64,000 nucleotides of DNA, taken from positions 62,001-126,000 of the forward strand of contig NIVC01001794.1 of NCBI GenBank assembly GCA_002269645.1, read 5' to 3'. Of the stretch, positions 8,340-54,587 are shown piece after piece. Source of the DNA: Macrostomum lignano (lineage: Eukaryota). Under the pieces are notes generated by a model. It was not told the DNA's origin, searched no databases, and worked only from the letters and a program-made list of their open reading frames with translations. A program made the position numbers and the translations under genes. Each line of letters opens with the position of its first letter. Within the stretch, counting starts at the first letter, position 1.

Positions 8340-9235
8340 TGGCTGAGAGACAGGGGCACCCACCTATAGCTGAGACAGGGGCACCCACCTATAGGAGACA
8401 GGGGCACCCACCTATAGCTGAGACAGGGGCACCCACCTAGGAGACAGGGGCACCCACCTAGGAGACAGGGGCACCCACCTATAGCTGAGACAGGGGCACC
8501 CACCTATCGCTGAGACAGGGGCACCCACCTATAGCTGAGACAAGGGCACCCACCTAGGAGATAGGGGCACCCACCTATAAGAGACAAGGGCACCCAAACT
8601 AAGAGACAGGGGCACCCAACCTAGGAGACGGGACACCCACCTATAGGAGACAGGGGCTCCCACCTATAGGAGACAAGGGCACCCAAACTAGGAGACGGGG
8701 GCACCCACCTATAGGAGACAGGGGCACCCAACCTAGGAGACGGGGGCAGTGGGGGCACCCAACCTAGGAGACGGGGGCAGTGGGGGCACCCAACCTAGGA
8801 GACGGGGCAGTGGGGGCACCCAACCTAGGAGACGGGGCAGTGGGGGCACCCAACCTAGGAGACAGGGGCAGTGGGGGCACCCAACCTAGGAGACGGGGCA
8901 GTGGGGGCACCCAACCTAGGAGACGGGGCAGTGGGGGCACCCAACCTAGGAGACAGGGGCAGTGGGGGCACCCACCTATAGGAGACAGGGGCACCCAACC
9001 TAGGAGACGGGGGCAGTGGGGGCACCCAACCTAGGAGACGGGGGCAGTGGGGGCACCCAACCTAGGAGACGGGGGCAGTGGGGGCACCCAACCTAGGAGA
9101 CAGGGGCAGTGGGGGCACCCAACCTAGGAGACAGGGGCAGTGGGGGCACCCAACCTAGGAGACAGGGGCAGTGGGGGCACCCAACCTAGGAGACAGGGGC
9201 AGTGGGGGCACCCAACCTAGGAGACAGGGGCACCC
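8340..9235. repeat. GC-rich minisatellite (GGAGAC(A/G)GGGGCA(GTGGGG)GCACCCAACCTA-type units, ~20-32 bp)
   Basis: Directly visible tandem array that shifts from short GGGGCACCCACCTATA units to longer units containing GCAGTGGGGGCACCC. Confidence 0.95.
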
Positions 9236-9580: not shown

Positions 9581-12500
9581 ATGGCAGGCGCCATGCTGGG
9601 ACTCTGGCTGGTGCTGCAGCTGCTGCTAACCGGACCTCAAGACGTATTGGCGATTGGAAATTGTTCGGATGCAGTAAGCGATTGACTGACTCACTGGCTT
9701 ATGTAGAATTGCAGTGGCGTAGCTAGGATTTTGAAATGGAGAGATAACTGAAAATGTCGAAGCCATAGTCAAATAGAATAGGGTTTTTGTAATTTTTGCT
9801 TTACGTATGCATTAAAAAAGTACCTTTATCATTACTAATAGGCTAAAAAACTTTCTTAACTTTCTAAAAAAACTGAAAAAGCCGTCAGACATCTGCCCTG
9901 TGACTACGGCATTTTGGGAACTCAGGATTCGCGAAAACATCGTTGTATCCCCCACCCCAGCGACGCAACTGTAGAATTGTTACATTATAAACATTTCTTA
10001 AAAATAATGCTTAATTACACCGTAAAATGTGTCAGTTTGTGCACGTTCTATGAATTACCTCATTACCTACACTGGGGTGCAAAGAACTCAAGAAAAAAGT
10101 TTAGCGTTTAACAATGGAAGGGCCCGTCGACTCTATTCGCTATCAGTTAAGCCAACAAATCGCATGATTCATGCAAACATGGACATGTAAAAGCCGTGTG
10201 ATCACGTGTATTTTAATCATTTTTATGCTGTCTTAAATTATCATAAAAAGTTACAAGTACGCAAGTCATTTACAAAATTAATGCATCTCGGGTGTGTGGA
10301 AAGTGCTCTCGGGTGTCAACACTTAAAAGTTAACTTGGAGTGAACCAGTATGTCTCTCTATTCACCAAGTAGGCCAAGGATCTGCTAGATTCGTAAAATC
10401 ATGTAGGAAAATAAACATCCGCAGTCCTGAACATAACTGTTCAGTATAACAAATACGAGCCAGCACAAAAAATTAAGCGCAAGCTTTAAATTACTTTACA
10501 CAATCAATACCTCAGTGTTTTTAAACATGTAAAAATATTAAAGCGGACGCAAAATTTTAGACTCAAATGTACTGCCCAACAACGAAATTCTGCAAAACTA
10601 TAGAGATCTGCATCGAAGAACTTCAAACCATCGAAAAAAACTGTTCCGAACGAAACATGGTAAGCATGAGGATGCATGTCTGATTCTAATCCCCGAGAAG
10701 TGACTCATGCGTTCAAAAATTAAAACACACTTTCCGCAGAACTTCTGTCCGAAACAAGGATTCTGCTACAACCGAACGCTTTACCTGCCTTGGTCCACTT
10801 GTGACTATGCGAGTGAGAGATGCGACAATTTTACAGACTCAAGCGAGCCTGTCGAACTGGGCCGCTGCTATGGTGGATTCAACTTGTGTCTGGAAAAGAA
10901 GCAGTGCGACCAGGTGTCAGCGAAGAGGTCGTGCCCAAACAACAAGACTATAATCACATCGGTCTCGCCGACTAACTCCTGCTTCGTGCCTGCGACGCTG
11001 AATGTTCGCTTCACCGTTGTGCAGCAGGTAGGTCCACCAGTGATGAGACTCGGGTCCCACCGGCTCGACAACAGCCGCATCGGTCAGGAGATTCAGCTCA
11101 ACAGATTACTCGACAACAACAGCTGCGTGAGCGCAGACGCACTGGGAATGTCTAGCTACGCTGGCTACAATGCGACAATTTCGTGGGTTACGCTGAAGAT
11201 GCGCTTCGTCGACAAGGACAACAACTTGGTTGCCGAGTGTCAGCCTACCTACGGATTCCTGGTTCCGCCGAAGCCAGTACCATCAATTGGCTTCCCGACA
11301 GTGGTAGTGCGAAAGAACGGCACCGCCACTATGTACGACTATCTGTATCCGGGAAATATTCTGAACGCTACTATCGACAAGTCGAATGCATCCGCACCGT
11401 GGTGCGACAGTCTCGGTCGCTCCGAGTTTCCTGGACCCGGACCCAATGACCAGATTCGTCGGCTATGCCGAGAAGGGCCGAGGAAAGCCGCCTACTGCTA
11501 TATTGAAGCACCGAGACTCTATACCGCCTATTCGTTCTACACCTACTCTTATATGGTGGCGCTCCTACCAAACAGTTTGGCTCTGGATATCTCCTGTTAT
11601 CGATTGAAAATGTGCGCATGAGTTTGCACCTCAGACAGCCAGGCGATGCGAATCTGACATGCAGATTGTGGAACGGACTGCTGCCGATGCGCGACACGTC
11701 TCCGGCTGACAGAAGCTACTTTGGAGACGAGATTCTCCGAGTCGAGTACAGGCTAGGCTGCTCCTACGGCTACGAGCCCTGCCTTGTAACTAAAAACTGC
11801 GTCCGAGTTGGAAGTCCTTGTAGAGAGCAGCTCAATTGCAGCATGGTGAGTCTTGAATTTTGTGCACAATTTAAAATTTAATTATTACAGTACTTTCAAA
11901 GTATTGGTTAGAGCTAACTTGCAAATGAAAATGCTATGCTTTTCAGGGAACGATCGACTGCCCAGCGGCGAATAGCTGCGCAAACATCAGCTCGTGCATT
12001 GACAGTATGATTGCGATGGAGAAGAACTGCGCAGCAATCGACCAGGCAAGTACAATATTTATACCTTTTAATTACATGGTTACATACAATTGTAGAGTAA
12101 GCCTAGCGCGTTACATACGTTTCGCTAGTTGGCCTAGAAAATTCAGTGATATACTCGTATACATGTCTAGACGCATTGAAACACACTTTCTACAGAAATT
12201 CTGTCCGAAACAAGGATTCTGCTACAACCGAACGCTTTACCTGCCTTGGTCCACTTGTGACTATGCGAGTGAGAGATGCGACAATTTTACAGACTCAAGC
12301 GAGCCTGTCGAACTGGGCCGCTGCTATGGTGGATTCAACTTGTGTCTGGAAAAGAAGCAGTGCGACCAGGTGTCAGCGAAGAGGTCGTGCCCAAACAACA
12401 AGACTATAATCACATCGGTCTCGCCGACTAACTCCTGCTTCGTGCCTGCGACGCTGAATGTTCGCTTCACCGTTGTGCAGCAGGTAGGTCCACCAGTGAT

Positions 12501-15500
12501 GAGACTCGGGTCCCACCGGCTCGACAACAGCCGCATCGGTCAGGAGATTCAGCTCAACAGATTACTCGACAACAACAGCTGCGTGAGCGCAGACGCACTG
12601 GAATGTCTAGCTACGCTGGCTACAATGCGACAATTTCGTGGGTTACGCTGAAGATGCGCTTCGTCGACAAGGACAACAACTTGGTTGCCGAGTGTCAGCC
12701 TACCTACGGATTCCTGGTTCCGCCGAAGCCAGTACCATCAATTGGCTTCCCGACAGTGGTAGTGCGAAAGAACGGCACCGCCACTATGTACGACTATCTG
12801 TATCCGGGAAATATTCTGAACGCTACTATCGACAAGTCGAATGCATCCGCACCGTGGTGCGACAGTCTCGGTCGCTCCGAGTTTCCTGGACCCGGACCCA
12901 ATGACCAGATTCGTCGGCTATGCCGAGAAGGGCCGAGGAAAGCCGCCTACTGCTATATTGAAGCACCGAGACTCTATACCGCCTATTCGTTCTACACCTA
13001 CTCTTATTATGGTGGCGCTCCTACCAAACAGTTTGGCTCTGGATATCTCCTGTTATCGATTGAAAATGTGCGCATGAGTTTGCACCTCAGACAGCCAGGC
13101 GATGCGAATCTGACATGCAGATTGTGGAACGGACTGCTGCCGATGCGCGACACGTCTCCGGCTGACAGAAGCTACTTTGGAGACGAGATTCTCCGAGTCG
13201 AGTACAGGCTAGGCTGCTCCTACGGCTACGAGCCCTGCCTTGTAACTAAAAACTGCGTCCGAGTTGGAAGTCCTTGTAGAGAGCAGCTCAATTGCAGCAT
13301 GGTGAGTCTTGAATTTTGTGCACAATTTAAAATTTAATTATTACAGTACTTTCAAAGTATTGGTTAGAGCTAACTTGCAAATGAAAATACTATGCTTTTC
13401 AGGGAACGATCGACTGCCCAGCGGCGAATAGCTGCGCAAACATCAGCTCGTGCATTGACAGTATGATTGCGATGGAGAAGAACTGCGCAGCAATCGACCA
13501 GGCAAGTACAATATTTATACCTTTTAATTACATGGTTACATACAATTGTAGAGTAAGCCTAGCGCGTTACATACGTTTCGCTAGTTGGCCTAGAAAATTC
13601 AGTGATATACTCGTATACATGTCTAGACGCATTGAAACACACTTTCTACAGAAATTCTGTCCGAAACAAGGATTCTGCTACAACCGAACGCTTTACCTGC
13701 CTTGGTCCACTTGTGACTATGCGAGTGAGAGATGCGACAATTTTACAGACTCAAGCGAGCCTGTCGAACTGGGCCGCTGCTATGGTGGATTCAACTTGTG
13801 TCTGGAAAAGAAGCAGTGCGACCAGGTGTCAGCGAAGAGGTCGTGCCCAAACAACAAGACCATAATCACATCGGTCTCGCCGACTAACTCCTGCTTCGTG
13901 CCTGCGACGCTGAATGTTCGCTTCACCGTTGTGCAGCAGGTAGGTCCACCAGTGATGAGACTCGGGTCCCACCGGCTCGACAACAGCCGCATCGGTCAGG
14001 AGATTCAGCTCAACAGATTACTCGACAACAACAGCTGCGTGAGCGCAGACGCACTGGAATGTCTAGCTACGCTGGCTACAATGCGACAATTTCGTGGGTT
14101 ACGCTGAAGATGCGCTTCGTCGACAAGGACAACAACTTGGTTGCCGAGTGTCAGCCTACCTACGGATTCCTGGTTCCGCCGAAGCCAGTACCATCAATTG
14201 GCTTCCCGACAGTGGTAGTGCGAAAGAACGGCACCGCCACTATGTACGACTATCTGTATCCGGGAAATATTCTGAACGCTACTATCGACAAGTCGAATGC
14301 ATCCGCACCGTGGTGCGACAGTCTCGGTCGCTCCGAGTTTCCTGGACCCGGACCCAATGACCAGATTCGTCGGCTATGCCGAGAAGGGCCGAGGAAAGCC
14401 GCCTACTGCTATATTGAAGCACCGAGACTCTATACCGCCTATTCGTTCTACACCTACTCTTATTATGGTGGCGCTCCTACCAAACAGTTTGGCTCTGGAT
14501 ATCTCCTGTTATCGATTGAAAATGTGCGCATGAGTTTGCACCTCAGACAGCCAGGCGATGCGAATCTGACATGCAGATTGTGGAACGGACTGCTGCCGAT
14601 GCGCGACACGTCTCCGGCTGACAGAAGCTACTTTGGAGACGAGATTCTCCGAGTCGAGTACAGGCTAGGCTGCTCCTACGGCTACGAGCCCTGCCTTGTA
14701 ACTAAAAACTGCGTCCGAGTTGGAAGTCCTTGTAGAGAGCAGCTCAATTGCAGCATGGTGAGTCTTGAATTTTGTGCACAATTTAAAATTTAATTATTAC
14801 AGTACTTTCAAAGTATTGGTTAGAGCTAACTTGCAAATGAAAATACTATGCTTTTCAGGGAACGATCGACTGCCCAGCGGCGAATAGCTGCGCAAACATC
14901 AGCTCGTGCATTGACAGTATGATTGCGATGGAGAAGAACTGCGCAGCAATCGACCAGGCAAGTACAATATTTATACCTTTTAATTACATGGTTACATACA
15001 ATTGTAGAGTAAGCCTAGCGCGTTACATACGTTTCGCTAGTTGGCCTAGAAAATTCAGTGATATACTCGTATACATGTCTAGACGCATTGAAACACACTT
15101 TCTACAGAAATTCTGTCCGAAACAAGGATTCTGCTACAACCGAACGCTTTACCTGCCTTGGTCCACTTGTGACTATGCGAGTGAGAGATGCGACAATTTT
15201 ACAGACTCAAGCGAGCCTGTCGAACTGGGCCGCTGCTATGGTGGATTCAACTTGTGTCTGGAAAAGAAGCAGTGCGACCAGGTGTCAGCGAAGAGGTCGT
15301 GCCCAAACAACAAGACCATAATCACATCGGTCTCGCCGACTAACTCCTGCTTCGTGCCTGCGACGCTGAATGTTCGCTTCACCGTTGTGCAGCAGGTAGG
15401 TCCACCAGTGATGAGACTCGGGTCCCACCGGCTCGACAACAGCCGCATCGGTCAGGAGATTCAGCTCAACAGATTACTCGACAACAACAGCTGCGTGAGC

Positions 15501-18500
15501 GCAGACGCACTGGGAATGTCTAGCTACGCTGGCTACAATGCGACAATTTCGTGGGTTACGCTGAAGATGCGCTTCGTCGACAAGGACAACAACTTGGTTG
15601 CCGAGTGTCAGCCTACCTACGGATTCCTGGTTCCGCCGAAGCCAGTACCATCAATTGGCTTCCCGACAGTGGTAGTGCGAAAGAACGGCACCGCCACTAT
15701 GTACGACTATCTGTATCCGGGAAATATTCTGAACGCTACTATCGACAAGTCGAATGCATCCGCACCGTGGTGCGACAGTCTCGGTCGCTCCGAGTTTCCT
15801 GGACCCGGACCCAATGACCAGATTCGTCGGCTATGCCGAGAAGGGCCGAGGAAAGCCGCCTACTGCTATATTGAAGCACCGAGACTCTATACCGCCTATT
15901 CGTTCTACACCTACTCTTATTATGGTGGCGCTCCTACCAAACAGTTTGGCTCTGGATATCTCCTGTTATCGATTGAAAATGTGCGCATGAGTTTGCACCT
16001 CAGACAGCCAGGCGATGCGAATCTGACATGCAGATTGTGGAACGGACTGCTGCCGATGCGCGACACGTCTCCGGCTGACAGAAGCTACTTTGGAGACGAG
16101 ATTCTCCGAGTCGAGTACAGGCTAGGCTGCTCCTACGGCTACGAGCCCTGCCTTGTAACTAAAAACTGCGTCCGAGTTGGAAGTCCTTGTAGAGAGCAGC
16201 TCAATTGCAGCATGGTGAGTCTTGAATTTTGTGCACAATTTAAAATTTAATTATTACAGTACTTTCAAAGTATTGGTTAGAGCTAACTTGCAAATGAAAA
16301 TACTATGCTTTTCAGGGAACGATCGACTGCCCAGCGGCGAATAGCTGCGCAAACATCAGCTCGTGCATTGACAGTATGATTGCGATGGAGAAGAACTGCG
16401 CAGCAATCGACCAGGCAAGTACAATATTTATACCTTTTAATTACATGGTTACATACAATTGTAGAGTAGCCTAGCGCGTTACATACGTTTCGCTAGTTGG
16501 CCTAGAAAATTCAGTGATATACTCGTATACATGTCTAGACGCATTGAAACACACTTTCTACAGAAATTCTGTCCGAAACAAGGATTCTGCTACAACCGAA
16601 CGCTTTACCTGCCTTGGTCCACTTGTGACTATGCGAGTGAGAGATGCGACAATTTTACAGACTCAAGCGAGCCTGTCGAACTGGGCCGCTGCTATGGTGG
16701 ATTCAACTTGTGTCTGGAAAAGAAGCAGTGCGACCAGGTGTCAGCGAAGAGGTCGTGCCCAAACAACAAGACCATAATCACATCGGTCTCGCCGACTAAC
16801 TCCTGCTTCGTGCCTGCGACGCTGAATGTTCGCTTCACCGTTGTGCAGCAGGTAGGTCCACCAGTGATGAGACTCGGGTCCCACCGGCTCGACAACAGCC
16901 GCATCGGTCAGGAGATTCAGCTCAACAGATTACTCGACAACAACAGCTGCGTGAGCGCAGACGCACTGGAATGTCTAGCTACGCTGGCTACAATGCGACA
17001 ATTTCGTGGGTTACGCTGAAGATGCGCTTCGTCGACAAGGACAACAACTTGGTTGCCGAGTGTCAGCCTACCTACGGATTCCTGGTTCCGCCGAAGCCAG
17101 TACCATCAATTGGCTTCCCGACAGTGGTAGTGCGAAAGAACGGCACCGCCACTATGTACGACTATCTGTATCCGGGAAATATTCTGAACGCTACTATCGA
17201 CAAGTCGAATGCATCCGCACCGTGGTGCGACAGTCTCGGTCGCTCCGAGTTTCCTGGACCCGGACCCAATGACCAGATTCGTCGGCTATGCCGAGAAGGG
17301 CCGAGGAAAGCCGCCTACTGCTATATTGAAGCACCGAGACTCTATACCGCCTATTCGTTCTACACCTACTCTTATTATGGTGGCGCTCCTACCAAACAGT
17401 TTGGCTCTGGATATCTCCTGTTATCGATTGAAAATGTGCGCATGAGTTTGCACCTCAGACAGCCAGGCGATGCGAATCTGACATGCAGATTGTGGAACGG
17501 ACTGCTGCCGATGCGCGACACGTCTCCGGCTGACAGAAGCTACTTTGGAGACGAGATTCTCCGAGTCGAGTACAGGCTAGGCTGCTCCTACGGCTACGAG
17601 CCCTGCCTTGTAACTAAAAACTGCGTCCGAGTTGGAAGTCCTTGTAGAGAGCAGCTCAATTGCAGCATGGTGAGTCTTGAATTTTGTGCACAATTTAAAT
17701 TTAATTATTACAGTACTTTCAAAGTATTGGTTAGAGCTAACTTGCAAATGAAAATACTATGCTTTTCAGGGAACGATCGACTGCCCAGCGGCGAATAGCT
17801 GCGCAAACATCAGCTCGTGCATTGACAGTATGATTGCGATGGAGAAGAACTGCGCAGCAATCGACCAGGCAAGTACAATATTTATACCTTTTAATTACAT
17901 GGTTACATACAATTGTAGAGTAAGCCTAGCGCGTTACATACGTTTCGCTAGTTGGCCTAGAAAATTCAGTGATATACTCGTATACATGTCTAGACGCATT
18001 GAAACACACTTTCTACAGAAATTCTGTCCGAAACAAGGATTCTGCTACAACCGAACGCTTTACCTGCCTTGGTCCACTTGTGACTATGCGAGTGAGAGAT
18101 GCGACAATTTTACAGTCTCAAGCGAGCCTGTCGAACTGGGCCGCTGCTATGGTGGATTCAACTTGTGTCTGGAAAAGAAGCAGTGCGACCAGGTGTCAGC
18201 GAAGAGGTCGTGCCCAAACAACAAGACCATAATCACATCGGTCTCGCCGACTAACTCCTGCTTCGTGCCTGCGACGCTGAATGTTCGCTTCACCGTTGTG
18301 CAGCAGGTAGGTCCACCAGTGATGAGACTCGGGTCCCACCGGCTCGACAACAGCCGCATCGGTCAGGAGATTCAGCTCAACAGATTACTCGACAACAACA
18401 GCTGCGTGAGCGCAGACGCACTGGGAATGTCTAGCTACGCTGGCTACAATGCGACAATTTCGTGGGTTACGCTGAAGATGCGCTTCGTCGACAAGGACAA

Positions 18501-24500: not shown

Positions 24501-27500
24501 TGTCCTCACGCATTCGGTGCCTGCTTGGACTTTGCCAATTGCCGTCAATTGTGTCCTCGCCCTCATCGGCTTTTGCCAGCTGCTCAGCTCGTTTCTGGCT
24601 TCAAGGGCTTGTACAGGGATGCTCCGGACCCCGGCGTCTGTCGCACAGGTCACCTTCTTGGCGCTGCGTCTGCCGCACGCATCAAAGTAATTTTTGTTAG
24701 CCCGGCATCCGGTACTGAGATGGAGTTGGATGGTCGCAAAATCAACGTCAGCGGAAGTCCAGAGCCGATCAGACCCGACAGTTGCTTCCAGCTTCTCTTA
24801 CACGGCGCTCAAAATGTACTCATCAATCTCACGTACTCGCTGCTACTTCCGGACGGATCGGAATGCGTTATGAGAAGCTTCGTGCTCCTACCTCCGAGAG
24901 CTTTACCTCCCAATGTGACACTGAATAAATCCAGCCTCAGCGTCATGGACACCTCTGTGCTGGATGTGTCTCTCTCCACAGTGCTGGTGTTGAGTCCAAA
25001 CGGTTTCCCGAGCAGCAGCGTGTGCGATCTAAGACTTAACAACGTAATTGATCTGCACTGTGAGCGAAGTCTCTGCAACATGCGCTCAAGGGTTGAGTTC
25101 TCGACTGTCGGTGGCGTGTTCTGCAAGTACATGGTGCAGCCAGTGTGGTAAGTTTACTCCTGCTACGAAGGTAGAGGCGGCACATTGCTGCCAGAACAAT
25201 GTAAGAAATGTAACAAGAACCGAAACATAAATAGATTTTTCGGTTTAATACTTGAAATAATGGAATAAAAGGAGAATGAAAAATATCTCATGTGAATTGT
25301 TTTGGTTCAAGTATTATACTTCAGTATATACATAAATATAGTGTAAACGTAATTTGTGTAACTTCCAGGTCTGACATCTACGGAAACCTGACGTTCCGAA
25401 GTGGAGTCACGACAAGCGGTATCAACGAGTACATGAGAGGCTTTCTCGTTCCGAGTCCAAGCCAAGCCAACATCCGATTCGAACCAAATCGCAATGCCGC
25501 TACCAAGACCTTCGTTCTGATGTGCCAGGCTTGGAGTGGACTGCCGCCTCGCTTCAGCTACACCAGCTCTGGTTCCCTTGTTCCATCCGTCCTTCCTTTT
25601 ACAGCCATGGGTGGGATAGTCAAAGTCACAATCAGCGTGCTGCACAAGGAGCAGCCTCCTCTTGTGAATAAAGATTTCTTCTCTGTTGGTGTTCTCAAGG
25701 ACAGGGAGAACGAGTACGTGAGTCAGAAATTACAGCGAGAGCGAGGCTTCATGCTGCAACGGCATGGAGAAAACTACGTCACTCAGATTCGGGTCGGCGA
25801 CATGGTTTCACTGTTCTTTTGTGACGATAATACATTTGAGTTGGGCGCTCTCGTTCTACAAGGCCTCGGCGACGATGCAAGTGGTGTTCTGGAGTACCAG
25901 CTGCCGAACTCCATGTCCTGGCAGACTCTGAATGTATCCGCTGACAAGCCTGCGTTTAAGCAGTATCGCATGCTCTCGCGTTTTAAGGACTCGGCAAAAA
26001 CTTCGGATGCCTTTTCAACCATCCAGTGTTTGGGAAGCATCTCATCTACATCTTCCTCCACGCTGCAGCTCTCTGACTTCCTAGCAAATGGCGTCAACGG
26101 TACGGGGCCTGTCACAGCGATGTTCCTCCCGGCCAACGCTACGATCCGATTTCGGCCAACCGTCCCGGCGTCCTGGTCCCGCAGTCGCGCCATCCTTGCT
26201 TTTACAGCCGCAGAGAAGCTGGTCGCCCAACAACAAGTCTACATCAATCCACTCGTTGTCAGTAGCGTGGTCAACAAAAGTGCAGCTGCTGGATGGGCAG
26301 TTGTCCGTCCAGTGACGGTTGGCTGCGACAATCAGCCATGGTCAGGTCTCCAGACTGATGTCTGTAAAATCTGTGGTGGAAATGGTCGCTCATGCATCGA
26401 CTGCAACGGTGATGCAAATGGCACAGCGATCTGGAACGACTGTGGCAACTGCGTTGGTGGAAGAACTGGCAAAGCCATGCGTTATGGAAAGGACTGCGCT
26501 GGTCGATGCAACGGATCTTTTGTCTCGCCAATGCCTGGCCTGTGCTACAATTCCAGTCGATTTGCGACTGCTGATGAGTACATCAGATCGGTGTGGTGCG
26601 ATGGTAAAGTGAACAGCACTGCGCGCATCAATAAGTGCGGCTTCTGCACCGAGGGAAGCACCGGAAGAGCGGCCAACTTCGGCGTAGGACCCTGCGGCTG
26701 CAGCAACGACACTTCCTGTATCACAGGCTGTGACAGTGTCGCTGAGCCATCGTTGTCGTCCCGAAAGACTTACGATAAATGCCGTCGTTGTCTGCTGCCC
26801 AGCGACCCGCAGAGAGACATCTGTGCTCGGATCCACTTCACGATTACCCGAAACGCTTGCGTGGGGTCATACGCTGCTTATCAGCAAGTGACAATCAGCA
26901 GCAGCAGCATCAACCTTACAATCAGCTCAATCACTCTGCGCCTGCTGAAAGTGACCGATTGGGTAAGACATCAATTCCATTTTTGCAATAATATAACTAA
27001 AGGCTCTTTTACGTACACCGCTATCAAATTGCACAAATGTAAATTACACGACGATGTAAAACGCGGCGAAAAAAATAGTACAAGCCGTTTATCCTGATAG
27101 TGACGATTAATGGCCTAATTTAGTGGCAACGCGCCTAAAGGTTTACTTACAGATGTATTTACAGATGTAGATTTAGGCGATTATTAGCAAAATAGATAGC
27201 AAGTCCAGCAATACTCAAAATTTATAAGCTTCAATTGATAACTTTGTAATTTACGTTGATAAAATACAAACTACTTCTTCCGCCCTCACATTGACAGTCG
27301 CTCTACACGGAGCTTCAAGCAATATCCATCGATGTATCTTCTGGTCTGTTCCGCTTTTCTGTGCCCTCGGGTCTCGTTGCTCGCGAGTACGCTCTACAGG
27401 TTAAATACTTGACCGCTTCCGGTGCTACAGTCATCGAGGACGTTTCCGGTGGAACCTTGACTGTTTTTGGAGCTCCCAGCTTGTCCAGCTTGAGTGTCGG

Positions 27501-30500
27501 GAGCAGACTCACGCTAGAAAATCCCGTTTACTCTCTGCCAGTGAGCGGACAGGGATTCGTCAACACGCCCGATCTCGTCTGCCTTCTCTACTGCGACGAT
27601 CTTAGCCGCCACACCCGATGCGACCCGCGCACTGGCTTTCTCACTGTGCCGGCCAGATTCGACAGCGCGACAAGCGTCACCTGCAATATCTCTGCGCTGG
27701 CCGAAGTCCGACAGTCGCTGCAATGGAAGCTCAGCGTCATGAACTGCAAGCTGCAAACACTTAGCTACGATGCATATGCGGTGTTCAAGTGAGTGGTTTG
27801 TTTTTATTGCTGCAAGTATGAATGCAATGATTTACACCAAGTGACACATCGGTTACACCTCTTGCAATCACCGACCAGGCACAACTCTCTGCCGTTCTCG
27901 ATCCGCTCGAGTAAGGGTCCGGTGCTGCTCTCAGCAACTGATGACGCTAGTGGCTACCACCTGTATCTCCAGTTCGACACAAACATCCAGCTGCGACAGA
28001 CGGCGTGCTCGGCCATCTTTGATGCGTCGACTTTTGCGCTGGCCCAAAGTGCTACGCGAGGGCAAACGCTCTCATCGTGTGGAAAGGACGTGGCGCAACA
28101 ATCTGCTCTGGCTCTCGAATCAGCATCAATTCGAATATCATTTATGTGGGTGGCAGCGACATCAGCCTGGCCACCAGTTCCAGTGTCAGCACCGCTGTTG
28201 TGAATGCAAACGGTCGGAAGCCACCTGTCATCTTTTTGGCCGGAGTTCAATCAGATGCCAACCAGGTGGCCACCGTCGGACTCTGTGACTCGTTCAACCT
28301 GTATGCCACCATCAGAGGATCGATGGTGCAGCAGATCACTTGGGACATCCGGTGTGCTGCAGGCTCAGCTTGTCAAGCAACTGAGCTGGCCGCATTCCAG
28401 TCAAAGTTTTCCACAGAAGTCACTTTCTACGCCGGAAAGGATGTTAGTGATCTCAAGCGCTTAAGTCAGAAGATATTACTCAAAAAAAATTATAATATTT
28501 ACAGTCTCAAATCTTGCTTTATTCTTCAGATTCCGCCTGGGGAGTCATACAACATCACGGCTTCTGCCCAGAACGAATGCGGAACACAGTCGAATACGGC
28601 GAGCATCATAGTTAAACGACTCGTTGAAAAAACGCCATTTAGCATTAGTATCTTCGGACAGCAAAAGTATGTGAAGCCCGATCTTTGGTACAGCGCTGTG
28701 CTTTTTGTACGACCGTCATTTTGCTATACCAAGGCTATCGGCACTCTGAGTGTAAGTAACAGTACTCTGAGAACGCTTATTGTATAAATCATGCATCATA
28801 GTATGATAAGAGAAGCAAAATTTGCAACAAAATCTCAATGAGCATATCTCTGAAATGTCTTAGCTCGTACTATCGAATATAAAGTACACCTGCTGTCTGC
28901 TATACAATAGTATACCTTTAGGCTCTTGCACCTACACTGCCATCAGGCGTGATTCTCCACATTTTAATTTTGCAGTACAAGTGGAAGATCGTCGGTGGCA
29001 CCAGAGCCATCAATGTGGACCAACAGGCGATCACAGGTAAATTCTTCCGACTGAGATCTGGAGTCCTGCAAGGAGGCCAGTCCTACAACCTGAGTGTCTG
29101 CGCTTCCATGCCGACTTGGCCCAACGTGGCGTGCGGCTTTTTGCTTCTGGAGACGATCAGCCGCCCTCTGGTTCTCATGTTCGTCCGCGGAGGTCGCTCT
29201 GATCTCGGCGTCAGCGATGCACTGCAGGAATCCGTGTACATCATCGATCCAGACTACTCGACTGAGACGACATTTTGCACCTTCTATCTGACCAAGTGGG
29301 CCAACGGTGAGGCAATCTACATGCGCAACATACACACTGGGACCATGCTTCTTCGGTTCGGATGGAACTCAGACATCATCGAACAGTATCCAAGTGCCTT
29401 GGCCGGATCCCAGTGTATACGAGCTACCCTCAGGCTTCATGAACCTCACTGTGAGTTGTCAGCGGGGTCAGCGACGGTCCAGTCGTACAAAGCTTGTGCA
29501 GATTTTGTCTCGTCCGCCTCCATCAGTCCGGATCTTGACCGAGCCGAGCAACAAACCAATCAATCCAAACGCTGCTGTCCCGGTGACAGCTTTAGTGATT
29601 TCCAGTGAGATCACTCAGACTCAATGGTCTGTGGATACTCAAGAGACTGGCTTTGGCTCGCTGTCGCTTCAGCAGTGCTCAGTAGGACCGCCGCTGACCG
29701 ATACATGCGTACCCAATCGACGCTGCTTCATCACTTTGGTTCTTAAGCCAGGACGAAGCTGCAGCTTTGCTGCCGGTGTCTCCTACCGACTGCTTTTGAT
29801 CGCCAGCGCCAGTTCCGGGACCGCTCAGGCCCAGTTCGACTTCCGCGTGAATGCATCACTGTCTGTGACTCCCAGTCAAGGAGCCGCTCTGGAGACACCC
29901 TTCACGCTCACCATATGGCCGAATATCACTGACGATTCCGACGTGTCCTTCAGTTACAGCGCCATGTGCTGTCGCCAAGATTCATCAAGCCAGTGCGTCA
30001 GCGTAACTAGTGAACCAACACCCGCTAGACTGCTCACCACTCGTCTACCTGGAGGAAACTGGATCTGCAAAGCTTCAGCCATCGACTCTAACGGAGCAGG
30101 CTCCGATTGGTTCTCATTTACTACTGTAATTCAGGTGCAAGCGAAGCAGCTGACGCTTGCCAAGCTCGACGATTTACTAAACAACTTGAACAATATTTCA
30201 AACAGCTGTGAGGGCGATTAAGTTAGCTCGTATTTCCTATTTCTATTTAGCTTCGAATTCAAATTAACTAGGTATCCATTTGATATATTGTATTGTAGTT
30301 GACGGTCCAGCACTATGCGGAATGATCCTGAGTGAGCCAGATACTGGCCTGTCGTCCGAGGAAAAGAACAAGAAGAATTAGCTGGTGCAGGAACTGGTGA
30401 TTCGGGATCTTCTGACTTTAGACACAAGGTATATAAGTCATGCTAAATAGTAATACACTTTTTTAACAGAAAACCAACCTGTCAATAGTGTAAAATAACT

Positions 30501-32930
30501 AAAGGGCAGTATTATATTCAAACTTTATCGATAATTTCAGTGTGCCATCGGTTTCCTGTCTCAGGGCTGCAACAAGCTGTCAACTGTTTCGGAAAACGAG
30601 AGCCAACAGCCAGTATATAACTAACTTGGTACTGAACACTCTTAAAAAGTGCCTTGATGCGTTTCATTCTCAGTCGTTTTCACCAGCTTCGCCAGACAGC
30701 GCAAAAAGAAGGCGAAGGCGCAACGCGTCGGGATCTCAGCGTGGAACAACAAGCAAAATAACTGCCACTGAAGTGAAGTCCGTCCTCGACATCGCATCCG
30801 GAGTCTATCACTCCACGCTCGATTCGACAACAGCTGCTGATATCCAGGCTACAATTCTTAACACCGTTCCTGCCTTCTGCAACAGTCAAAATCCGAACTC
30901 GCTAGCTCAGGCGGCAGCATCCACAATGACCGTTGTACGCGTGTACAAGACGTCTTTCAACTCAGTCGGTTCAGCCAATCTGGAGATGGGATGTGACTCA
31001 GGAAGCACCGACTGTCTATCCAATTTCACAGTCCGTCAACAGGTTGCACTTGGTGCCGATCTCGAGCAGCGCTACTATAACTGGTCATGTGGCCAGACTG
31101 ACTGCTTCCAGGACGGTGCCTGCATCGGAACCATCCTGCTGGACAAGGATCTGCTCACTCCACAGGCCAAAGTGGCTTCTCCGACGATTCCCCCGCGACG
31201 CAGTCCTCTGGCCTACGTAGGAATATTTCACCCGAGCGACGGTGCGAACCAGAATGTTTCACGCCTCAGCAATGGTGTGACTATCACCACCAACATCAGT
31301 GGCTCTGTGAATCTTAGTAGCATCAGCCTCATCTGCCGTAGCTGGAGCGGAGCCGACTGGACCCCGGATAACTGCACGACTCGCGCGCCATTCCAGACCG
31401 ACGATGGCATCTGGCACGTAACGTGTGTGTGCCATGACATATCTTCATTTATTGGCGTTTTTGAGGGACCACCAGGCTTCCAACCGGAGACAACCATCGC
31501 TCCATCTACCACCGAAAGTGAGATTGGCCAGGCAAGGACGACGTTTGAAACAACACTTGAATCTCGCTTAACGACTACAATTTCGGAGATGCATACCTCA
31601 TCTGTGTCTTTTTCGAGTACCATCACTTCTACTCAGGCACCCAGTAGTACGTCTGCGACACTTTCGAAAGCGCCGAGTTTGTCTAGCACTTCTCAGAGTA
31701 CGATCACTTCTACTCAGGAATCCACTAGTACGTCTGCGACGCTTTCGAAAGCGCCGAGTTTGTCTAGCACTTCTCAGAGTACCATCACTTCTACTCAGGA
31801 ACCCACTAGTACATCTGCGACACTTTCGAAAGCGCCGAGTTTGTCTAGCACTTCTCAGAGTACCATCACTTCTACTCAGGAACCCACTAGTACGTCGGCG
31901 ACACTCTCAGAGACGCAAACTTCAGCTGCAACGCTTTGGAACAGCATCACGACGACTATATTACCCCGTGTAACGGCTCCGACACTCTCAGAGACGGACA
32001 CTATAGCTGTGGCACTCCAAATTAGGGTCACAGAGTCATTCTCTAACGTCGTTACAGACGAAAGCCGCCTTCAAGGCCACCTGACGAGTCAGCTTGCGCG
32101 TCAGCTAAGGCTCGCTGAGTCGCAACTAACCGACATGCAGTTTGCAAATGGCAGCGTTCTTATCAGTTTTACCGTCAACAGTCAGTCTGGTGCCAACACT
32201 AGTGCTTCCTTCGCTGTTTATTTGCTGGTGCAGCTCATGAACAACCGCCAGCTCGTACTACTTGGCCTGAGCAACAGCAGCCTGACGGTCTCCTGGGAGT
32301 ACCTGCGGGTGCTGGACGTAAAAACAGCTATGCAGCCTACTGTAAGGACTAGCAGCAACAACACCAACATTATTTCCATCTCTGTTGGTGCTTCGGTTGG
32401 TGCCCTTTGCCTAATTGGGACTTTTATAGTAGTCCTTCTGCTTATGCGAAGGAGCAACCGAAACTCTAAAGTCCCAGAAGAACATGAGAGCAACTTAAGG
32501 AATGATTGGAATACGGTGCGTGACCCGAGAGCAACGGATACAAGTTGGCCGGTCGGTGTTATTCCAGTCAAGTTTGCACCACCCCGTTGGAAAACGGTAA
32601 GGAGCTCTTTCGGTGGGCTACATTTTTTGTTTGCGAGCGAAGCTGTACGTAGTAGGGACTTTATTGCACACACTGTTCTATAGGGTTTGGTCTTCATATT
32701 AAAAACTATGCGACTCAATCACAAATGAACGTGTACTCGCTCACAAGTAAAAAAAGATTTCTTAGTGATATTTGTTCTGAGAAATTGATTTTAATATTTT
32801 TCATTACTTGCATCAACGCGCACCCGTGTCCTTCCTACGACAGGAAATTCTCAGGGAGACGGGTCCATCGCAAAGTCGAGAGTCGAGAGCTGAGCGAGTA
32901 AGGGAATGGAGCAACTTGAAATACTATTAA
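9581..32930 (+). CDS. Giant multi-exon type I membrane protein: tandem Cys-rich modules + DxCGxCGG repeats + REJ/GAIN-GPS-like region + mucin stalk + SEA-like domain + 1 TM
   Basis: Exon 1 9581-9673 encodes signal peptide MAGAMLGLWLVLQLLLTGPQDVLA (donor GTAAGC, phase 0). Module exons start at 10740, 12196, 13652, 15108, 16564, 18019, 19476 and 22861, each followed by a small exon. Further exons: 24110-24202, ~24249-24362, ~24493-25148, ~25369-26962, ~27298-27789, ~27879-28442, 28530-28752, ~28977-30207, 30299-30428, 30541-32596 and 32844-32930 (ends NLKYY*). Splice phases are consistent throughout. TM at ~32370-32445 (IISISVGASVGALCLIGTFIVVLLLM-RRSNR). Contains several 1-nt indels and one in-frame TAG. 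Confidence 0.75.
9712..9971. mobile_element. Non-autonomous hAT-type MITE in intron 1
   Basis: Left end CAGTGGCGTAGC, right end GCGACGCAACTG (2 mismatches to the perfect TIR), exact 8-bp TSD TAGAATTG (9704-9711 and 9972-9979). Confidence 0.8.
10740..20781 (+). repeat. Coding tandem array, ~1456-bp period, 7 units (1107-bp exon, 101-bp intron, 99-bp exon, 150-bp intron)
   Basis: Large-exon starts 10740/12196/13652/15108/16564/18019/19476 give spacings of 1455-1457. Exons and introns are near-identical up to ~20250. Confidence 0.97.
21297..21939 (-). mobile_element. Internally deleted Tc1/mariner element
   Basis: TIRs CACTCAGCAA(C/A)ATTGAAAAGT at both ends, flanked by TA (21295-96 and 21940-41). 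Minus ORF ends WDYLKRSIRRENPPQNVAQLRESLSTAWQQL...MPRRVSALLDARGCYTRY (Tc1 C-terminus). An N-terminal HTH-like fragment remains; the DDE core is missing. Confidence 0.88.
21995..22170. repeat. Short degenerate satellite CCTTGACATCTCAGCAATTCCCC
   Basis: About 5-6 imperfect copies; reverse complement of the array at 51870-53610. Confidence 0.8.
31619..31905 (+). repeat. Coding 81-bp (27-aa) Ser/Thr mucin-like repeats
   Basis: TITSTQ(A/E)(P/S)(S/T)STSATLSKAPSLSSTSQS three times plus a partial fourth copy, between the GPS-like motif and the SEA-like domain. Confidence 0.9.
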
Positions 32931-49487: not shown

Positions 49488-49509
49488 CTGGAAATCAATT
49501 GCGGCTTGG

Positions 49510-54530: not shown

Positions 54531-54587
54531 AAACTGTGATTGGAGTTTGGACGGAAAGCCCCAACGGGGGTTGGAATTGGCTAGTTG

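What the first reader, a model, noticed from the sequence alone, without database searches (positions are those of the whole stretch)
9581..32930. Giant polycystin-like single-pass receptor/adhesin with an unusual domain order
Seen in sequence: phase-consistent exons link a signal peptide (9581) to a TM helix (~32400) and a stop at 32930, about 5,600 aa by hand count. The order is 8-9 Cys-rich ~400-aa modules, DxCGxCGG repeats (GCDNQPWSGLQTDVCKICGG, NDCGNCVGG, NKCGFC), Ig/IPT-like and REJ-like beta-rich segments, a GPS-like motif, an S/T stalk, a SEA-like domain, one TM and a short tail. Established: REJ+GPS proteins (PKD1 family) continue into multi-TM channel regions, and adhesion-GPCR GPS motifs continue into 7TM. 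Inference: here the GPS is followed by a stalk, SEA and a single TM, suggesting a lineage-specific surface receptor or adhesin built on a polycystin-like chassis.
Basis: partly seen in the sequence, partly recalled or inferred. Interest (0 to 1): 0.8.

Follow-up and report, generated by a model that had tools for sequence, protein, structure and literature searches.

The report
Decaying giant flatworm REJ surface-protein gene
This is a 23-kb gene of the flatworm Macrostomum lignano for a ~5,700-residue single-pass surface protein from a widespread but unstudied invertebrate family, which joins a polycystin-type REJ-GAIN ectodomain to a mucin-type stalk-SEA-membrane anchor; this copy carries frameshifts and a stop codon and is probably a recently disabled duplicate.

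Summary
One plus-strand gene (9581 to about 32893) can be spliced into about 5,690 codons. In order it encodes:
- a signal peptide;
- eight 402-aa Cys-rich modules, six of them 99.2-99.9% identical 1,456-bp tandem units;
- a CGxCGG Cys-rich region and an IPT-like segment;
- a REJ domain (Pfam REJ on a 93%-identical paralog);
- a GAIN fold (Foldseek to BAI3 GAIN, E=2.5e-9), an S/T stalk, a SEA-like βαββαβ domain with G|SVLI, one TM and a short tail.

Three points change the interpretation.
The 10-nt deletion, the 14-nt deletion and the TAG recur in a second, non-identical M. lignano sequence, so they look real. The 1-nt deletions look like long-read assembly errors. This copy is probably a young pseudogene.
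- The REJ-GAIN-stalk-SEA-1TM chassis is not lineage-specific. Collinear homologs occur in an annelid, bivalves, amphioxus, krill and horseshoe crab, all uncharacterised. Only the N-terminal modules are Macrostomum-specific.
- REJ+GPS with a single TM is already known (sea urchin SpREJ1).

The canonical GPS H-L-T/S triad is absent, whereas the SEA G-S motif and a furin-like polybasic site are conserved.

The parts
9581..9673 (+). Exon 1: start codon and signal-peptide-like sequence (31 codons), donor GTAAGC, phase 0
   Evidence: Sequence read; start of the DP gene model. No signal-peptide predictor was run.
10561..10659 (+). Exon B0: first 33-codon four-Cys mini-exon (TQMYCPTTKFCKTIEICIEELQTIEKNCSERNM)
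   Evidence: Acceptor and donor read; same length, phase and Cys spacing as the repeated B exons.
10740..20781 (+). Tandem array of seven units of ~1,456 bp. Each unit is an A exon (1,107 nt), a ~101-nt intron, a B exon (99 nt) and a ~150-nt intron. A exons start at 10740, 12196, 13652, 15108, 16564, 18019 and 19476. Copies 1-6 are 99.2-99.9% identical, introns included. Copy 7 is identical over its first ~775 nt and then diverges.
   Evidence: The splice junctions A|B|A are matched exactly by M. lignano protein P0004.
11551..11551 (+). 1-nt deletion (TT->T) that frameshifts module 1
   Evidence: Alignment to the intact copy 4.
12599..12599 (+). 1-nt deletion (GGG->GG) that frameshifts module 2. 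The same deletion occurs at 14055 (module 3) and 16967 (module 5).
   Evidence: Among copies 1-5, indel sites (4) outnumber substitution sites (2), which points to long-read consensus errors.
20782..22860 (+). 2.08-kb phase-0 intron between B7 and module 8; holds a GC-richer insert around 21300-21900
   Evidence: The two small exons that the DP placed inside it were rejected as spurious.
22861..24035 (+). Module 8 A exon (diverged copy, ~67% aa identity to copy 4), with a 1-nt deletion at 23659
   Evidence: Both L001 and P0008 read through this site in frame.
24110..24361 (+). Exon B8 (24110-24202) and Cys-rich exon X1 (24248-24361)
24495..25147 (+). Exon X2: Cys-rich start followed by a beta-rich segment. 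An alternative acceptor at 24588 is not excluded.
   Evidence: P0008 includes the 24495 start.
25369..26962 (+). Exon X3: beta-rich segment, then a CGxCGG Cys-rich region (26321-26824) carrying the motifs GCDNQPWSGLQTDVCKICGG, NDCGNCVGG and NKCGFCTEG
   Evidence: There is only a motif-level, non-significant match to the ADAMTS5 Cys-rich domain (E=0.17). The region is conserved in Dimorphilus and Branchiostoma homologs.
27298..27788 (+). Exon X4: IPT/Ig-like beta segment (fold not tested)
   Evidence: Collinear with P0007 residues 1-100.
27879..28751 (+). Exons X5a (27879-28442) and X5b (28530-28751), the start of the REJ region. A 10-nt frameshifting deletion lies at 28040/28041 and an 87-nt intron at 28443-28529.
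   Evidence: P0008's gene model skips X4 and X5a to dodge this lesion.
28976..30207 (+). Exon X6: REJ region. A 14-nt frameshifting deletion lies at 29346/29347 and a 15-nt in-frame deletion at 29855.
   Evidence: P0008 contains the junction reading TMLLRFGWNSDIIEQYPS that the deletion creates. Pfam PF02010 REJ is on record for the 93%-identical P0007.
30299..30428 (+). It has an in-frame TAG at 30379-30381 where the paralog has GAG.
30541..32612 (+). Exon X7, carrying:
- a helical segment with the polybasic KRRRRR site (30704-30721);
- the GAIN-like domain (30755-31471), whose GPS motif lies at 31424-31465;
- the S/T stalk (31472-32005), with 81-nt repeats at 31615-31958;
- the SEA-like domain (32006-32317), with G|S at 32147-32152;
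- the TM helix (32375-32461);
- the start of the cytoplasmic tail.
The 3' end (donor) is uncertain.
32844..32893 (+). Terminal exon (NSQGDGSIAKSRVES*), stop TGA at 32891-32893
   Evidence: Homologous to the last exon of P0007 (NTQGGGSIEMSRVEN*). The phase of the preceding donor is unresolved.

Best explanation
**What it is.** The window holds one copy of a Macrostomum lignano gene from a conserved, uncharacterised bilaterian-invertebrate family of giant type-I membrane glycoproteins. The family core runs in this order:
- a CGxCGG Cys-rich region and an IPT-like domain;
- a REJ domain;
- a helical linker with a furin-type polybasic site;
- a GAIN domain whose GPS lacks the canonical H-L-T/S triad;
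- an S/T-rich mucin stalk;
- a SEA domain with a conserved G|S(I/V)(I/L)V motif;
- one TM and a short tail.

In Macrostomum the core is preceded by eight 402-aa Cys-rich/beta-sandwich modules. These are encoded by a tandem array that is being homogenised at the DNA level, introns included.

**How an intact member would work (inferred).**
- The protein is exported and heavily glycosylated.
- It may be cut by a proprotein convertase in the exposed RRRRR loop.
- It may be self-cleaved in the SEA beta2-beta3 hairpin. The huge ectodomain would then be held on a small membrane stub non-covalently and could be shed under mechanical load, as in SEA-anchored mucins.
- The GAIN domain would act as a structural, non-cleaving module rather than as a tethered-agonist device, because no 7TM or 11TM body follows it.
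- The N-terminal modules would provide ligand or adhesion specificity.

**State of this copy.** It is probably a recently inactivated duplicate. It carries a 10-nt deletion, a 14-nt deletion and a nonsense codon, all of which are also present in a second, non-identical sequence of the species. It also carries five 1-nt deletions that are more likely assembly errors.

**Shown:** exon structure, repeats, lesions, homologs, and predicted folds with motif positions.
**Inferred:** the cleavages, shedding, function and pseudogene status.
For: **Gene model.** One 5,689-codon path has consensus splice sites, and every intron in the module region is phase 0.

**Species and paralog.**
- The module hits only M. 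lignano proteins and four unnamed short-contig proteins.
- The IPT+REJ query hits M. lignano P0007 at 93% identity, with Pfam REJ.
- The P0007 locus, L001, is collinear with window 22805-32501.

**Lesions.**
- They are listed against L001.
- P0008 (UniRef A0A1I8FVC6) differs from the window by clean substitutions (99% and 98.5% identity in long blocks).
- P0008 nevertheless contains the deletion-junction peptide, skips X4/X5a and skips the TAG exon.
- The 1-nt deletion at 23659 is absent from both P0008 and L001.
- L001 and P0008 have private frameshifts elsewhere.
- Among repeat copies 1-5 there are 4 indel sites against 2 substitution sites.

**Past constraint.** Divergence between the window and L001 is 4.2%, 2.65% and 6.7% at codon positions 1, 2 and 3, and 9.2% in introns. 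The rough dN/dS is about 0.4, and constraint is no weaker downstream of the first lesion.

**Folds.**
- The AF2 model of exon X7, built with a 17-sequence alignment, has pLDDT 85-93 over the GAIN-like and SEA-like parts.
- Foldseek matches BAI3 GAIN 4DLO (E=2.5e-9, prob 1.0), latrophilin GAIN 4DLQ (E=4e-6) and CD97 8IKJ (E=1.8e-4).
- It also matches the EpCAM/Trop2 membrane-proximal domain (prob 1.0, rmsd 2.4 Å over 116 columns).
- The GPS turn lies between the last two GAIN strands, and G536-S537 lie in the beta2-beta3 hairpin of a βαββαβ domain.

**Family.**
- There are 24 HMMER hits from annelid, bivalve, amphioxus, krill and horseshoe crab.
- The alignment is collinear over window aa 3870-5320 (E=1e-66 and 2e-65).
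- Each full-length homolog has a single C-terminal TM.
- The polybasic site, the GPS Cys/Trp residues and the GSI(I/L)V motif are conserved.
Against: - No RNA or read-level data were available. Neither the single-transcript model nor the reality of any lesion is directly verified.
- P0008's source may be an older assembly built partly from the same reads as the window. The 'independent' confirmation of the three large lesions is then weaker than it looks.
- Coding constraint (dN/dS about 0.4) is just as strong downstream of the lesions. That fits either very recent inactivation or a functional gene with a faulty sequence.
- Sequence profiles do not support the SEA or GPS assignments. Pfam lists only REJ for P0007, and the profile-versus-PDB search gives only weak BAI2/BAI3 GPS hits (E=0.026 and 0.38). 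The SEA call rests on a predicted fold, on motif position, and on EpCAM/Trop2 matches rather than canonical SEA structures.
- Cleavage at the furin site, the SEA site or the GPS is untested.
- The module fold remains unidentified (pLDDT 62).
Confidence: 0.6

Rival explanations
1. The gene is intact and functional in the animal. On this view all eight lesions (seven frameshifts and the TAG) are assembly or consensus errors, or belong to one defective haplotype, and the worm makes the full ~5,700-aa receptor from this locus.
For: - The 1-nt deletions behave like long-read errors. They are private to each assembly, and indels outnumber substitutions among near-identical repeats.
- No other in-frame stop occurs in 5,689 codons.
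- dN/dS is about 0.4 and is not relaxed downstream of the lesions.
- The paralog locus L001 also has a frameshift although it is annotated as a gene.
Against: - Deletions of 10 and 14 nt and a G->T substitution are not typical long-read consensus errors.
- All three are reflected in P0008, whose sequence differs from the window by clean substitutions.
- No intact protein from this locus was returned by any search.
Confidence: 0.25
2. The lesions are real but the locus is still expressed as a truncated, secreted product. Translation would run from 9581 through the eight modules, the Cys-rich region and the IPT-like domain, and would stop soon after the 10-nt deletion (f0 stop at ~28201). The result would be a ~4,300-aa secreted module protein without REJ-GAIN-SEA-TM.
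For: If the 1-nt deletions are errors, everything upstream of 28041 is open. The first real lesion lies after the Macrostomum-specific part.
Against: - The stop would lie far upstream of many exon junctions, so by general knowledge the mRNA should be a target of nonsense-mediated decay.
- The downstream exons show no relaxation of constraint.
- There is no expression evidence.
Confidence: 0.08
3. There are two or more separate genes. The tandem module array (9581 to about 24200) would be its own secreted-protein gene, and the REJ-GAIN-SEA-TM gene would start downstream, as in the database model P0007, which starts in the IPT-like exon.
For: P0007 begins with a Met inside the IPT-like exon. No transcript evidence links the two halves.
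Against: - P0007's locus is cut by a contig end and has module 8, B8 and X1-X3 homologs upstream in the same order. Its start is therefore an annotation truncation.
- The core has no signal peptide of its own.
- All junctions from B7 through X2 are phase 0 and open.
- P0008's model joins modules 7-8 to the core.
- Homologs in other phyla carry long N-terminal Cys-rich repeats and the core in a single protein, with one N-terminal signal and one C-terminal TM.
Confidence: 0.07

Closest known systems
Polycystin-1 / PKD1 family ectodomain (human PKD1, PKDREJ; sea urchin SpREJ3)
   Same: A REJ domain is followed directly by a helical plus beta-sandwich GAIN domain ending in a GPS-type Cys/Trp motif. 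The ectodomain is very large, modular and glycosylated (PMC1934368).
   Different: - There is no 11-TM body, no PLAT/LH2 domain and no channel-like region. About 300 residues of stalk and SEA separate the GPS from the single TM.
- The canonical H-L-T/S cleavage triad is missing.
Sea urchin SpREJ1 (suREJ1), the sperm receptor for egg-jelly fucose sulfate polymer
   Same: It has REJ plus GPS and only one TM. It is a heavily glycosylated surface receptor and a precedent for a non-channel REJ protein (PMC1934368).
   Different: - SpREJ1 is 1,450 aa with EGF and C-type lectin domains, and its GPS sits just before the TM.
- It has no mucin stalk, no SEA domain, no CGxCGG/IPT region and no 402-aa module array.
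- No direct sequence comparison was made here.
SEA-anchored transmembrane mucins (MUC1, MUC3/12/13/17, MUC16)
   Same: The C-terminal cassette is the same: an S/T-rich stalk with a VNTR, a βαββαβ SEA-type domain with a G|S(V/I) motif in the beta2-beta3 turn, a single TM and a short tail. The proposed working principle, a non-covalent heterodimer that can be shed under force, is taken from these proteins (established knowledge, not tested here).
   Different: - The mucin part is a short stalk (~175 aa), not the bulk of the protein. The ectodomain is a folded multi-domain array.
- No significant sequence match to canonical SEA domains was found. The structural matches were to the divergent EpCAM/Trop2 domain.
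Adhesion GPCRs that combine SEA and GAIN (ADGRF5/Ig-hepta, ADGRF1, ADGRG6)
   Same: Both autoproteolysis-type modules occur in one ectodomain. Ig-hepta is cut at both (Abe et al. 2002, as cited in PMC13197933). The GAIN fold match is to aGPCR structures.
   Different: The order is reversed, GAIN then SEA, and the SEA rather than the GAIN abuts the membrane. There is no 7TM, so no tethered-agonist target.
Unnamed predicted proteins: Dimorphilus DgyrCDS10766/10767, Branchiostoma lanceolatum Hypp4289, Mercenaria LOC123548613, Potamilus CHS0354_018147, Mizuhopecten LOC110461915, Tachypleus LOC143237318
   Same: They share the same collinear core and the same C-terminal cassette. The furin-like site, the GPS Cys/Trp residues, the GSI(I/L)V motif and the single TM are all conserved. 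This is the true family of the window's gene.
   Different: The N-terminal regions are lineage-specific: other Cys-rich repeats in the annelid and clam, and a mucin-like region in amphioxus. None has the Macrostomum 402-aa module. None is characterised.
Abalone VERL (tandem ZP-N repeats homogenised by concerted evolution), recalled from memory and used only as an analogy
   Same: A surface glycoprotein whose N-terminal tandem repeats are kept near-identical within a species.
   Different: No homology was shown. A ZP relationship for the module could not be reproduced.

Membership tests
PKD1 / polycystin-1 family | REJ domain | tested here: met
   Pfam PF02010 (unmarked, so E<=1e-5) is on record for P0007, which is 93% identical to the window's REJ exons. 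Several homologs are named 'PKD/REJ-like domain-containing' by UniProt.
PKD1 / polycystin-1 family | GAIN domain with a GPS immediately upstream of the first TM | tested here: not met
   The GAIN fold is present (Foldseek to 4DLO E=2.5e-9, to 4DLQ E=4e-6). The GPS, however, is separated from the TM by a ~175-aa stalk and a ~105-aa SEA-like domain.
PKD1 / polycystin-1 family | PLAT/LH2 domain after TM1 and an 11-TM body | tested here: not met
   There is a single hydrophobic segment with KD >= 1.9 (aa 5584-5615) and a tail of at most ~80 aa. Each full-length homolog likewise has a single TM near its C-terminus.
Adhesion GPCRs | GAIN domain followed by a 7TM | tested here: not met
   The GAIN fold is met, but there is no 7TM.
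Autoproteolytic GAIN domains | Canonical H-X-S/T (H-L-T/S) triad at the turn before the last strand | tested here: not met
   The window and P0007 read C-V-C-H-D-I-S-S-F, with D-I|S at the triad positions and the His displaced by one. Most homologs read L-G|Y or P-G|Y. Cleavage itself cannot be tested here.
SpREJ1-type single-TM REJ proteins | REJ + GPS + one TM | tested here: met
   SpREJ1's features are taken from PMC1934368. Its EGF and C-type lectin domains were not looked for here.
SEA-anchored membrane mucins | SEA fold (βαββαβ) with G|S(V/I)xV in the beta2-beta3 turn, next to a single TM and preceded by an S/T-rich region | tested here: inconclusive
   - The predicted topology and motif position fit (pLDDT 83-94).
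- The motif is conserved in the family.
- Foldseek hits are to the EpCAM/Trop2 membrane-proximal domain, not to canonical SEA entries.
- There is no Pfam SEA hit on P0007.
- Cleavage was not tested.
Bilaterian REJ-GAIN-stalk-SEA-1TM family (unnamed) | Collinear homology from the CGxCGG region to the TM | tested here: met
   phmmer aligns window aa 3867-5311 to Branchiostoma residues 795-2203 (E=1e-66) and aa 3874-5283 to Potamilus residues 299-1688 (E=2e-65). There are separate SEA-TM matches to Potamilus, Dimorphilus, Mizuhopecten, krill and a short Logan-contig protein, but not to Branchiostoma.
ZP-module proteins (lead from the UniProt name of P0008) | ZP-N/ZP-C fold or profile match | tested here: inconclusive
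   There is no ZP hit by phmmer or hmmsearch against PDB. Foldseek of the low-confidence module model gives only generic Ig-like matches with TM about 0.15.
Intact protein-coding gene | Uninterrupted reading frame across all exons | tested here: not met
   There are seven frameshifting deletions and one in-frame TAG.

The most novel reading that the evidence does not exclude
The REJ-GAIN-stalk-SEA-1TM proteins may form a distinct, ancient class of bilaterian surface proteins that is undescribed in the literature I could search. They occur in flatworm, annelid, molluscs, arthropods and amphioxus; no vertebrate sequence was among the named hits (10 of the 24 had their source looked up), and vertebrates were not searched specifically. 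In this class a polycystin-type ectodomain has been uncoupled from any channel or GPCR body. The GAIN domain has lost its catalytic triad, and a membrane-proximal SEA domain together with a conserved furin site has taken over the proteolytic 'mechanical fuse' role. In Macrostomum the family would have acquired a fast-homogenising array of 402-aa modules of a new fold, for example for gamete, mate or substrate recognition. The window would then show one duplicate caught in the act of decay.
Probability: 0.3. Interest if true: 0.6.

Novelty: new variant of a known kind. Interest (0 to 1): 0.4.

Why it matters
- **GAIN biology.** If the family works as proposed, the REJ-GAIN ectodomain of polycystin-1 is a portable module that evolution has also mounted on a mucin-type SEA anchor. 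That would provide a natural 'GAIN without a tethered-agonist target' for testing what REJ-GAIN does by itself. It would also add a second proteolytic logic (furin plus SEA) to the PKD1/aGPCR world.
- **Macrostomum biology.** The 402-aa modules are a species-group-specific protein part of unknown fold under DNA-level concerted evolution. That pattern is typical of recognition or adhesion proteins.
- **Genome annotation.** The locus shows how tandem repeats, long-read indels and true lesions together fragment gene models. Three database proteins (P0004, P0007, P0008), carrying three different 'domain-containing' names, are fragments or distorted models of this one gene family: P0008 models this locus, P0007 its 93%-identical paralog, and P0004 another paralog.

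Tried and rejected
- **Word-index protein search.** The search with the GAIN/GPS region returned nothing, and the search with IPT+REJ returned only P0007. The exhaustive HMMER search later found P0008 and 22 remote homologs. The earlier 'no homolog' result was therefore a tool limitation, not biology.
- **PDB sequence searches.** Single-sequence phmmer of the C-terminus, X3 and the module gave nothing significant. The only hit was an ADAMTS5 Cys-rich motif match at E=0.17.
- **Module fold.** AF2 with a 9-row alignment gave pLDDT 62. Foldseek returned only generic tandem Ig-like hits with TM about 0.15. The profile-versus-PDB search returned only a weak LDLa-like hit at E=0.4.
- **ZP and disintegrin leads.** These came from UniProt names and could not be reproduced.
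- **First DP gene model errors.**
  - It put two small exons inside the 2.08-kb intron.
  - It 'spliced' around frameshifts with 44-47-nt pseudo-introns.
  - It skipped B0 and jumped from 30207 to a cryptic acceptor at 30687.
  - All of these were replaced after comparison with intact repeat copies and with P0007/L001.
- **Skipping the TAG exon.** This was considered as a rescue and rejected, because the exon is 130 nt long (phase 1 in, phase 2 out), so skipping shifts the frame.
- **The two large deletions cancelling out.** Their sum (-24 nt) restores the frame, so this was considered. It was rejected because the shifted frame hits a stop at ~28201.
- **Restricted tools.** P0008's DNA could not be retrieved.
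- **RNA genes.** tRNA and Rfam scans of the window found nothing.
- **Literature.** Searches for Macrostomum + REJ, for Mlig013328, and for GAIN + SEA + REJ found no description of this family.

Full report
**What is in the sequence.**
- The region is eukaryotic, with short introns. A stop-free scan of the plus strand shows a chain of long open segments from ~10.7 kb to 32.7 kb.
- I built a splice-aware dynamic-programming model and corrected it by hand, against intact repeat copies, and against a paralog. The result is one plus-strand gene of 29 exons from the ATG at 9581 to a terminal exon at 32844-32893.
- Exon 1 encodes MAGAMLGLWLVLQLLLTGPQDVLAIG... and ends at a GTAAGC donor.
- A Kyte-Doolittle scan finds one strong hydrophobic segment, aa 5584-5615.
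- The predicted product is therefore a type-I single-pass protein with 275 Cys and 123 N-glycosylation sequons.

**The module array.**
- A 33-codon four-Cys exon (B) and a 369-codon exon (A) alternate eight times, and every intron is phase 0.
- Seven units form a 1,456-bp tandem array at 10740-20781. Copies 1-6 are 99.2-99.9% identical, introns included. Copy 7 is identical for ~775 nt and then diverges.
- An eighth, diverged module lies behind a 2.08-kb intron.
- Identity that extends through the introns means homogenisation at the DNA level by unequal crossing-over or conversion, not protein-level selection.
- The B-exon donor is GC (CAG|GCAAGT) in the homogenised units.

**Organism and relatives.**
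- The module hits only Macrostomum lignano proteins and four unnamed short-contig proteins at 52-57% identity. None has a Pfam domain.
- M. lignano P0004 spans A-end | B | A-start exactly at my splice junctions.
- The IPT+REJ part hits M. lignano BOX15_Mlig013328g1 (P0007, 1,396 aa, 93% identity), whose only Pfam hit is REJ, PF02010.
- Its locus, L001, lies at the end of a 56-kb contig of GCA_002269645.1. It is collinear with the window from module 8 to the TM at 90-93% nucleotide identity, but not downstream of the gene. It is therefore a paralog or homeolog whose model is truncated by the contig end.
- An exhaustive HMMER search with exon X7 found P0008 (UniRef A0A1I8FVC6, M. lignano, 2,438 aa), which is a distorted gene model of essentially this locus. 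It also found 22 more distant homologs at 23-35% identity.

**The reading frame is broken.**

| Position | Lesion | Reference |
|---|---|---|
| 11551 | 1-nt deletion | intact repeat copy |
| 12599, 14055, 16967 | 1-nt deletion, the same GGG->GG | intact repeat copy |
| 23659 | 1-nt deletion | L001 |
| 28041 | 10-nt deletion | L001 |
| 29347 | 14-nt deletion | L001 |
| 29855 | 15-nt in-frame deletion | L001 |
| 30379-30381 | G->T change making a TAG | L001 |

- Skipping that exon shifts the frame. The two large deletions sum to -24 nt, but the shifted frame between them stops at ~28201.
- I separate two classes of lesion.
  - The 1-nt deletions look like long-read consensus errors. Among repeat copies 1-5, indel sites (4) outnumber substitution sites (2). 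The 23659 deletion is absent from both L001 and P0008. L001 and P0008 each have private frameshifts elsewhere.
  - The three larger lesions look real. P0008 differs from the window by clean amino-acid substitutions (99% and 98.5% identity in long blocks). It still contains the peptide TMLLRFGWNSDIIEQYPS created by the 14-nt deletion, jumps over X4/X5a around the 10-nt deletion, and uses the same cryptic splice that avoids the TAG exon.
- Divergence from L001 is 4.2%, 2.65% and 6.7% at codon positions 1, 2 and 3, against 9.2% in introns. The rough dN/dS is about 0.4 and is not relaxed downstream of the lesions. Inactivation, if real, is therefore recent.
- My reading is a young unprocessed pseudogene or decaying duplicate (about 0.6). 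The main alternative is an intact gene behind a poor sequence (about 0.25).

**Domain tests.**
- REJ: supported by the Pfam hit on the 93%-identical paralog.
- GAIN/GPS and SEA:
  - I aligned exon X7 with 16 trimmed homologs (alignment A3) and predicted its structure.
  - Residues 70-317 have pLDDT 85-93 and form two long helices plus a beta sandwich.
  - Residues 489-592 have pLDDT 83-94 and form a β-α-β-β-α-β domain.
  - Residues 612-640 form a TM helix, and the stalk (318-475) is disordered.
- Foldseek against the PDB gives these matches:

| Target | Domain | E-value | Note |
|---|---|---|---|
| 4DLO | BAI3 GAIN | 2.5e-9 | prob 1.0, 319 columns |
| 4DLQ | latrophilin GAIN | 4e-6 | |
| 8IKJ | CD97 | 1.8e-4 | |
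| 4MZV, 7PEE | EpCAM/Trop2 membrane-proximal domain | about 8e-3 | prob 1.0, rmsd 2.4 Å over 116 columns |

- The motif C-V-C-H-D-I-S-S-F sits in the turn between the last two GAIN strands. G536-S537 of NGSVLISF sit in the beta2-beta3 hairpin of the second domain, which is where SEA domains self-cleave.
The caveat is that the SEA call rests on predicted fold and motif. Pfam sees no SEA or GPS on P0007, and the profile-versus-PDB search gives only weak BAI2/BAI3 GPS hits.
- The canonical H-L-T/S triad is absent. Window and paralog have D-I|S, and most homologs have L-G|Y or P-G|Y.
- The alignment also shows, conserved across the family, the SEA motif GS(I/V)(I/L)V and a polybasic R-x-K/R-R site. 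The latter is KRRRRR at 30704-30721 and lies in a low-confidence loop.
- The CGxCGG region is real and conserved in homologs. Its resemblance to the ADAMTS Cys-rich domain is only at motif level (E=0.17).
- The IPT-like segment was not tested.
- The module fold could not be identified.

**Distribution.**
- The homologs come from the following taxa, and all are unnamed or 'PKD/REJ-like domain-containing':
  - the annelid Dimorphilus gyrociliatus;
  - the bivalves Potamilus, Mercenaria and Mizuhopecten;
  - amphioxus (Branchiostoma lanceolatum);
  - the krill Meganyctiphanes;
  - the horseshoe crab Tachypleus.
- Window aa ~3870-5320 aligns collinearly with the Branchiostoma and Potamilus proteins (E=1e-66 and 2e-65).
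- In Potamilus, Dimorphilus, Mizuhopecten and krill the SEA-TM cassette matches separately. Each full-length homolog has one TM near its C-terminus, and those that keep an N-terminus have a signal-like segment.
- The N-terminal thirds differ by lineage.
- The chassis is therefore an old bilaterian family, not a Macrostomum invention. The core never carries a signal peptide of its own, which supports joining the Macrostomum modules and the core into one gene.

**How it most likely works.** For an intact family member, all of the following is inferred.
- The protein is a secreted, heavily glycosylated type-I protein.
- A proprotein convertase cuts the exposed polybasic loop.
- SEA self-cleavage leaves the ectodomain non-covalently attached to a short stub of SEA beta strands, TM and tail.
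- The ectodomain can be released under mechanical load, as in SEA-anchored mucins.
- The GAIN domain is a non-cleaving structural module.
- The N-terminal repeats confer binding specificity.
- The short tail has no recognisable domain, so adhesion, protection or recognition is more likely than enzymatic signalling.

**Comparison with known systems.**
- The gene shares REJ+GAIN with PKD1-family proteins but fails the TM/PLAT criteria.
- It shares REJ+GPS+1TM with sea urchin SpREJ1 (PMC1934368), but adds a stalk and SEA and lacks the lectin/EGF head.
- It shares the stalk-SEA-TM cassette with membrane mucins.
- It combines SEA and GAIN as ADGRF5/Ig-hepta does (cited in PMC13197933), but in reverse order and without a 7TM.
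- I found no paper describing this family.

**Verdict.**
- The feature is real and the domain order was correctly read.
- The 'unusual architecture' belongs to a conserved but unstudied family that is already present in databases as unnamed predictions.
- This copy is probably non-functional.
- I rate it a new variant of a known kind, with moderate interest (0.4).

Noticed in passing
window 49181-56172, minus strand: This is a cation-dependent mannose-6-phosphate-receptor-like gene. The MRH domain lies at ~56172-55780 (PDB 1C39/1KEO, E=6e-8). The TM plus an acidic tail (…DEDDEHLISG) lies in the ORF at 49181-49675. Between them are kilobases of short tandem repeats reading PQYPPVSIS, which explain the strong GC skew at 52-56 kb.
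   Followed up: partly
window ~36107-42910, plus strand: The neighbouring gene has multiple sushi/CCP-like units (C1r, MASP-2 and DAF CCP matches, E from 2e-5 to 3e-3).
   Followed up: partly
window 8347-9232: Two minisatellites lie ~350 bp upstream of the gene's ATG. One has 23-25-nt units. The other has a 31-nt unit in 17 copies at 94% identity.
   Followed up: no
window 12046, 13502, 14958, 16415, 17869, 19326: The B-exon donor is the non-canonical GC (CAG|GCAAGT) in all six homogenised repeat units. B0, B7 and B8 use GT.
   Followed up: partly
window ~20250-20330 (module 7) versus P0008 residues 1-100: The switch from 'copy 1-6 type' to 'copy 7 type' sequence lies ~20 codons further 3' in P0008 than in the window. 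Two near-identical versions of the locus therefore have different conversion or crossover breakpoints.
   Followed up: no
window 31615-31958: The stalk contains an 81-nt (27-aa) S/T-rich repeat in 3.6 copies. The paralog P0007 lacks it and has a much shorter stalk, so this is a mucin-like VNTR.
   Followed up: partly
window 30704-30721 and alignment A3 columns ~92-98: A polybasic furin-type site (KRRRRR; RKKR, RRRKR or RRSKR in other phyla) is conserved across the family. It lies in a low-confidence loop between helices upstream of the GAIN beta sandwich.
   Followed up: partly
L001 ~4794-4800: The annotated paralog locus has its own -2/+1 frameshift in exon X3, where the window is intact. This may explain why its database gene model starts only at the IPT-like exon.
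   Followed up: partly
window 21300-21900, inside the 2.08-kb intron: A GC-richer stretch has ORFs of 105-114 aa on both strands. It may be a transposon fragment or another insert.
   Followed up: no
window 32500-32612: The last intron's only good donor (GTAAGG at 32598) is phase 0. Homology of the terminal exon to the paralog requires phase 1. Either there is a further 1-nt indel or the tail has diverged.
   Followed up: partly
tool behaviour: The word-indexed protein search missed P0007 and P0008, although they are 88-99% identical to the queries. Negative results from that tool were unreliable for this locus.
   Followed up: partly
window 184-792, minus strand: A 202-aa ORF (MSTNIELRDADSALDYL...) lies at the window's left edge and is probably an exon of another gene. 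It was not examined.
   Followed up: no
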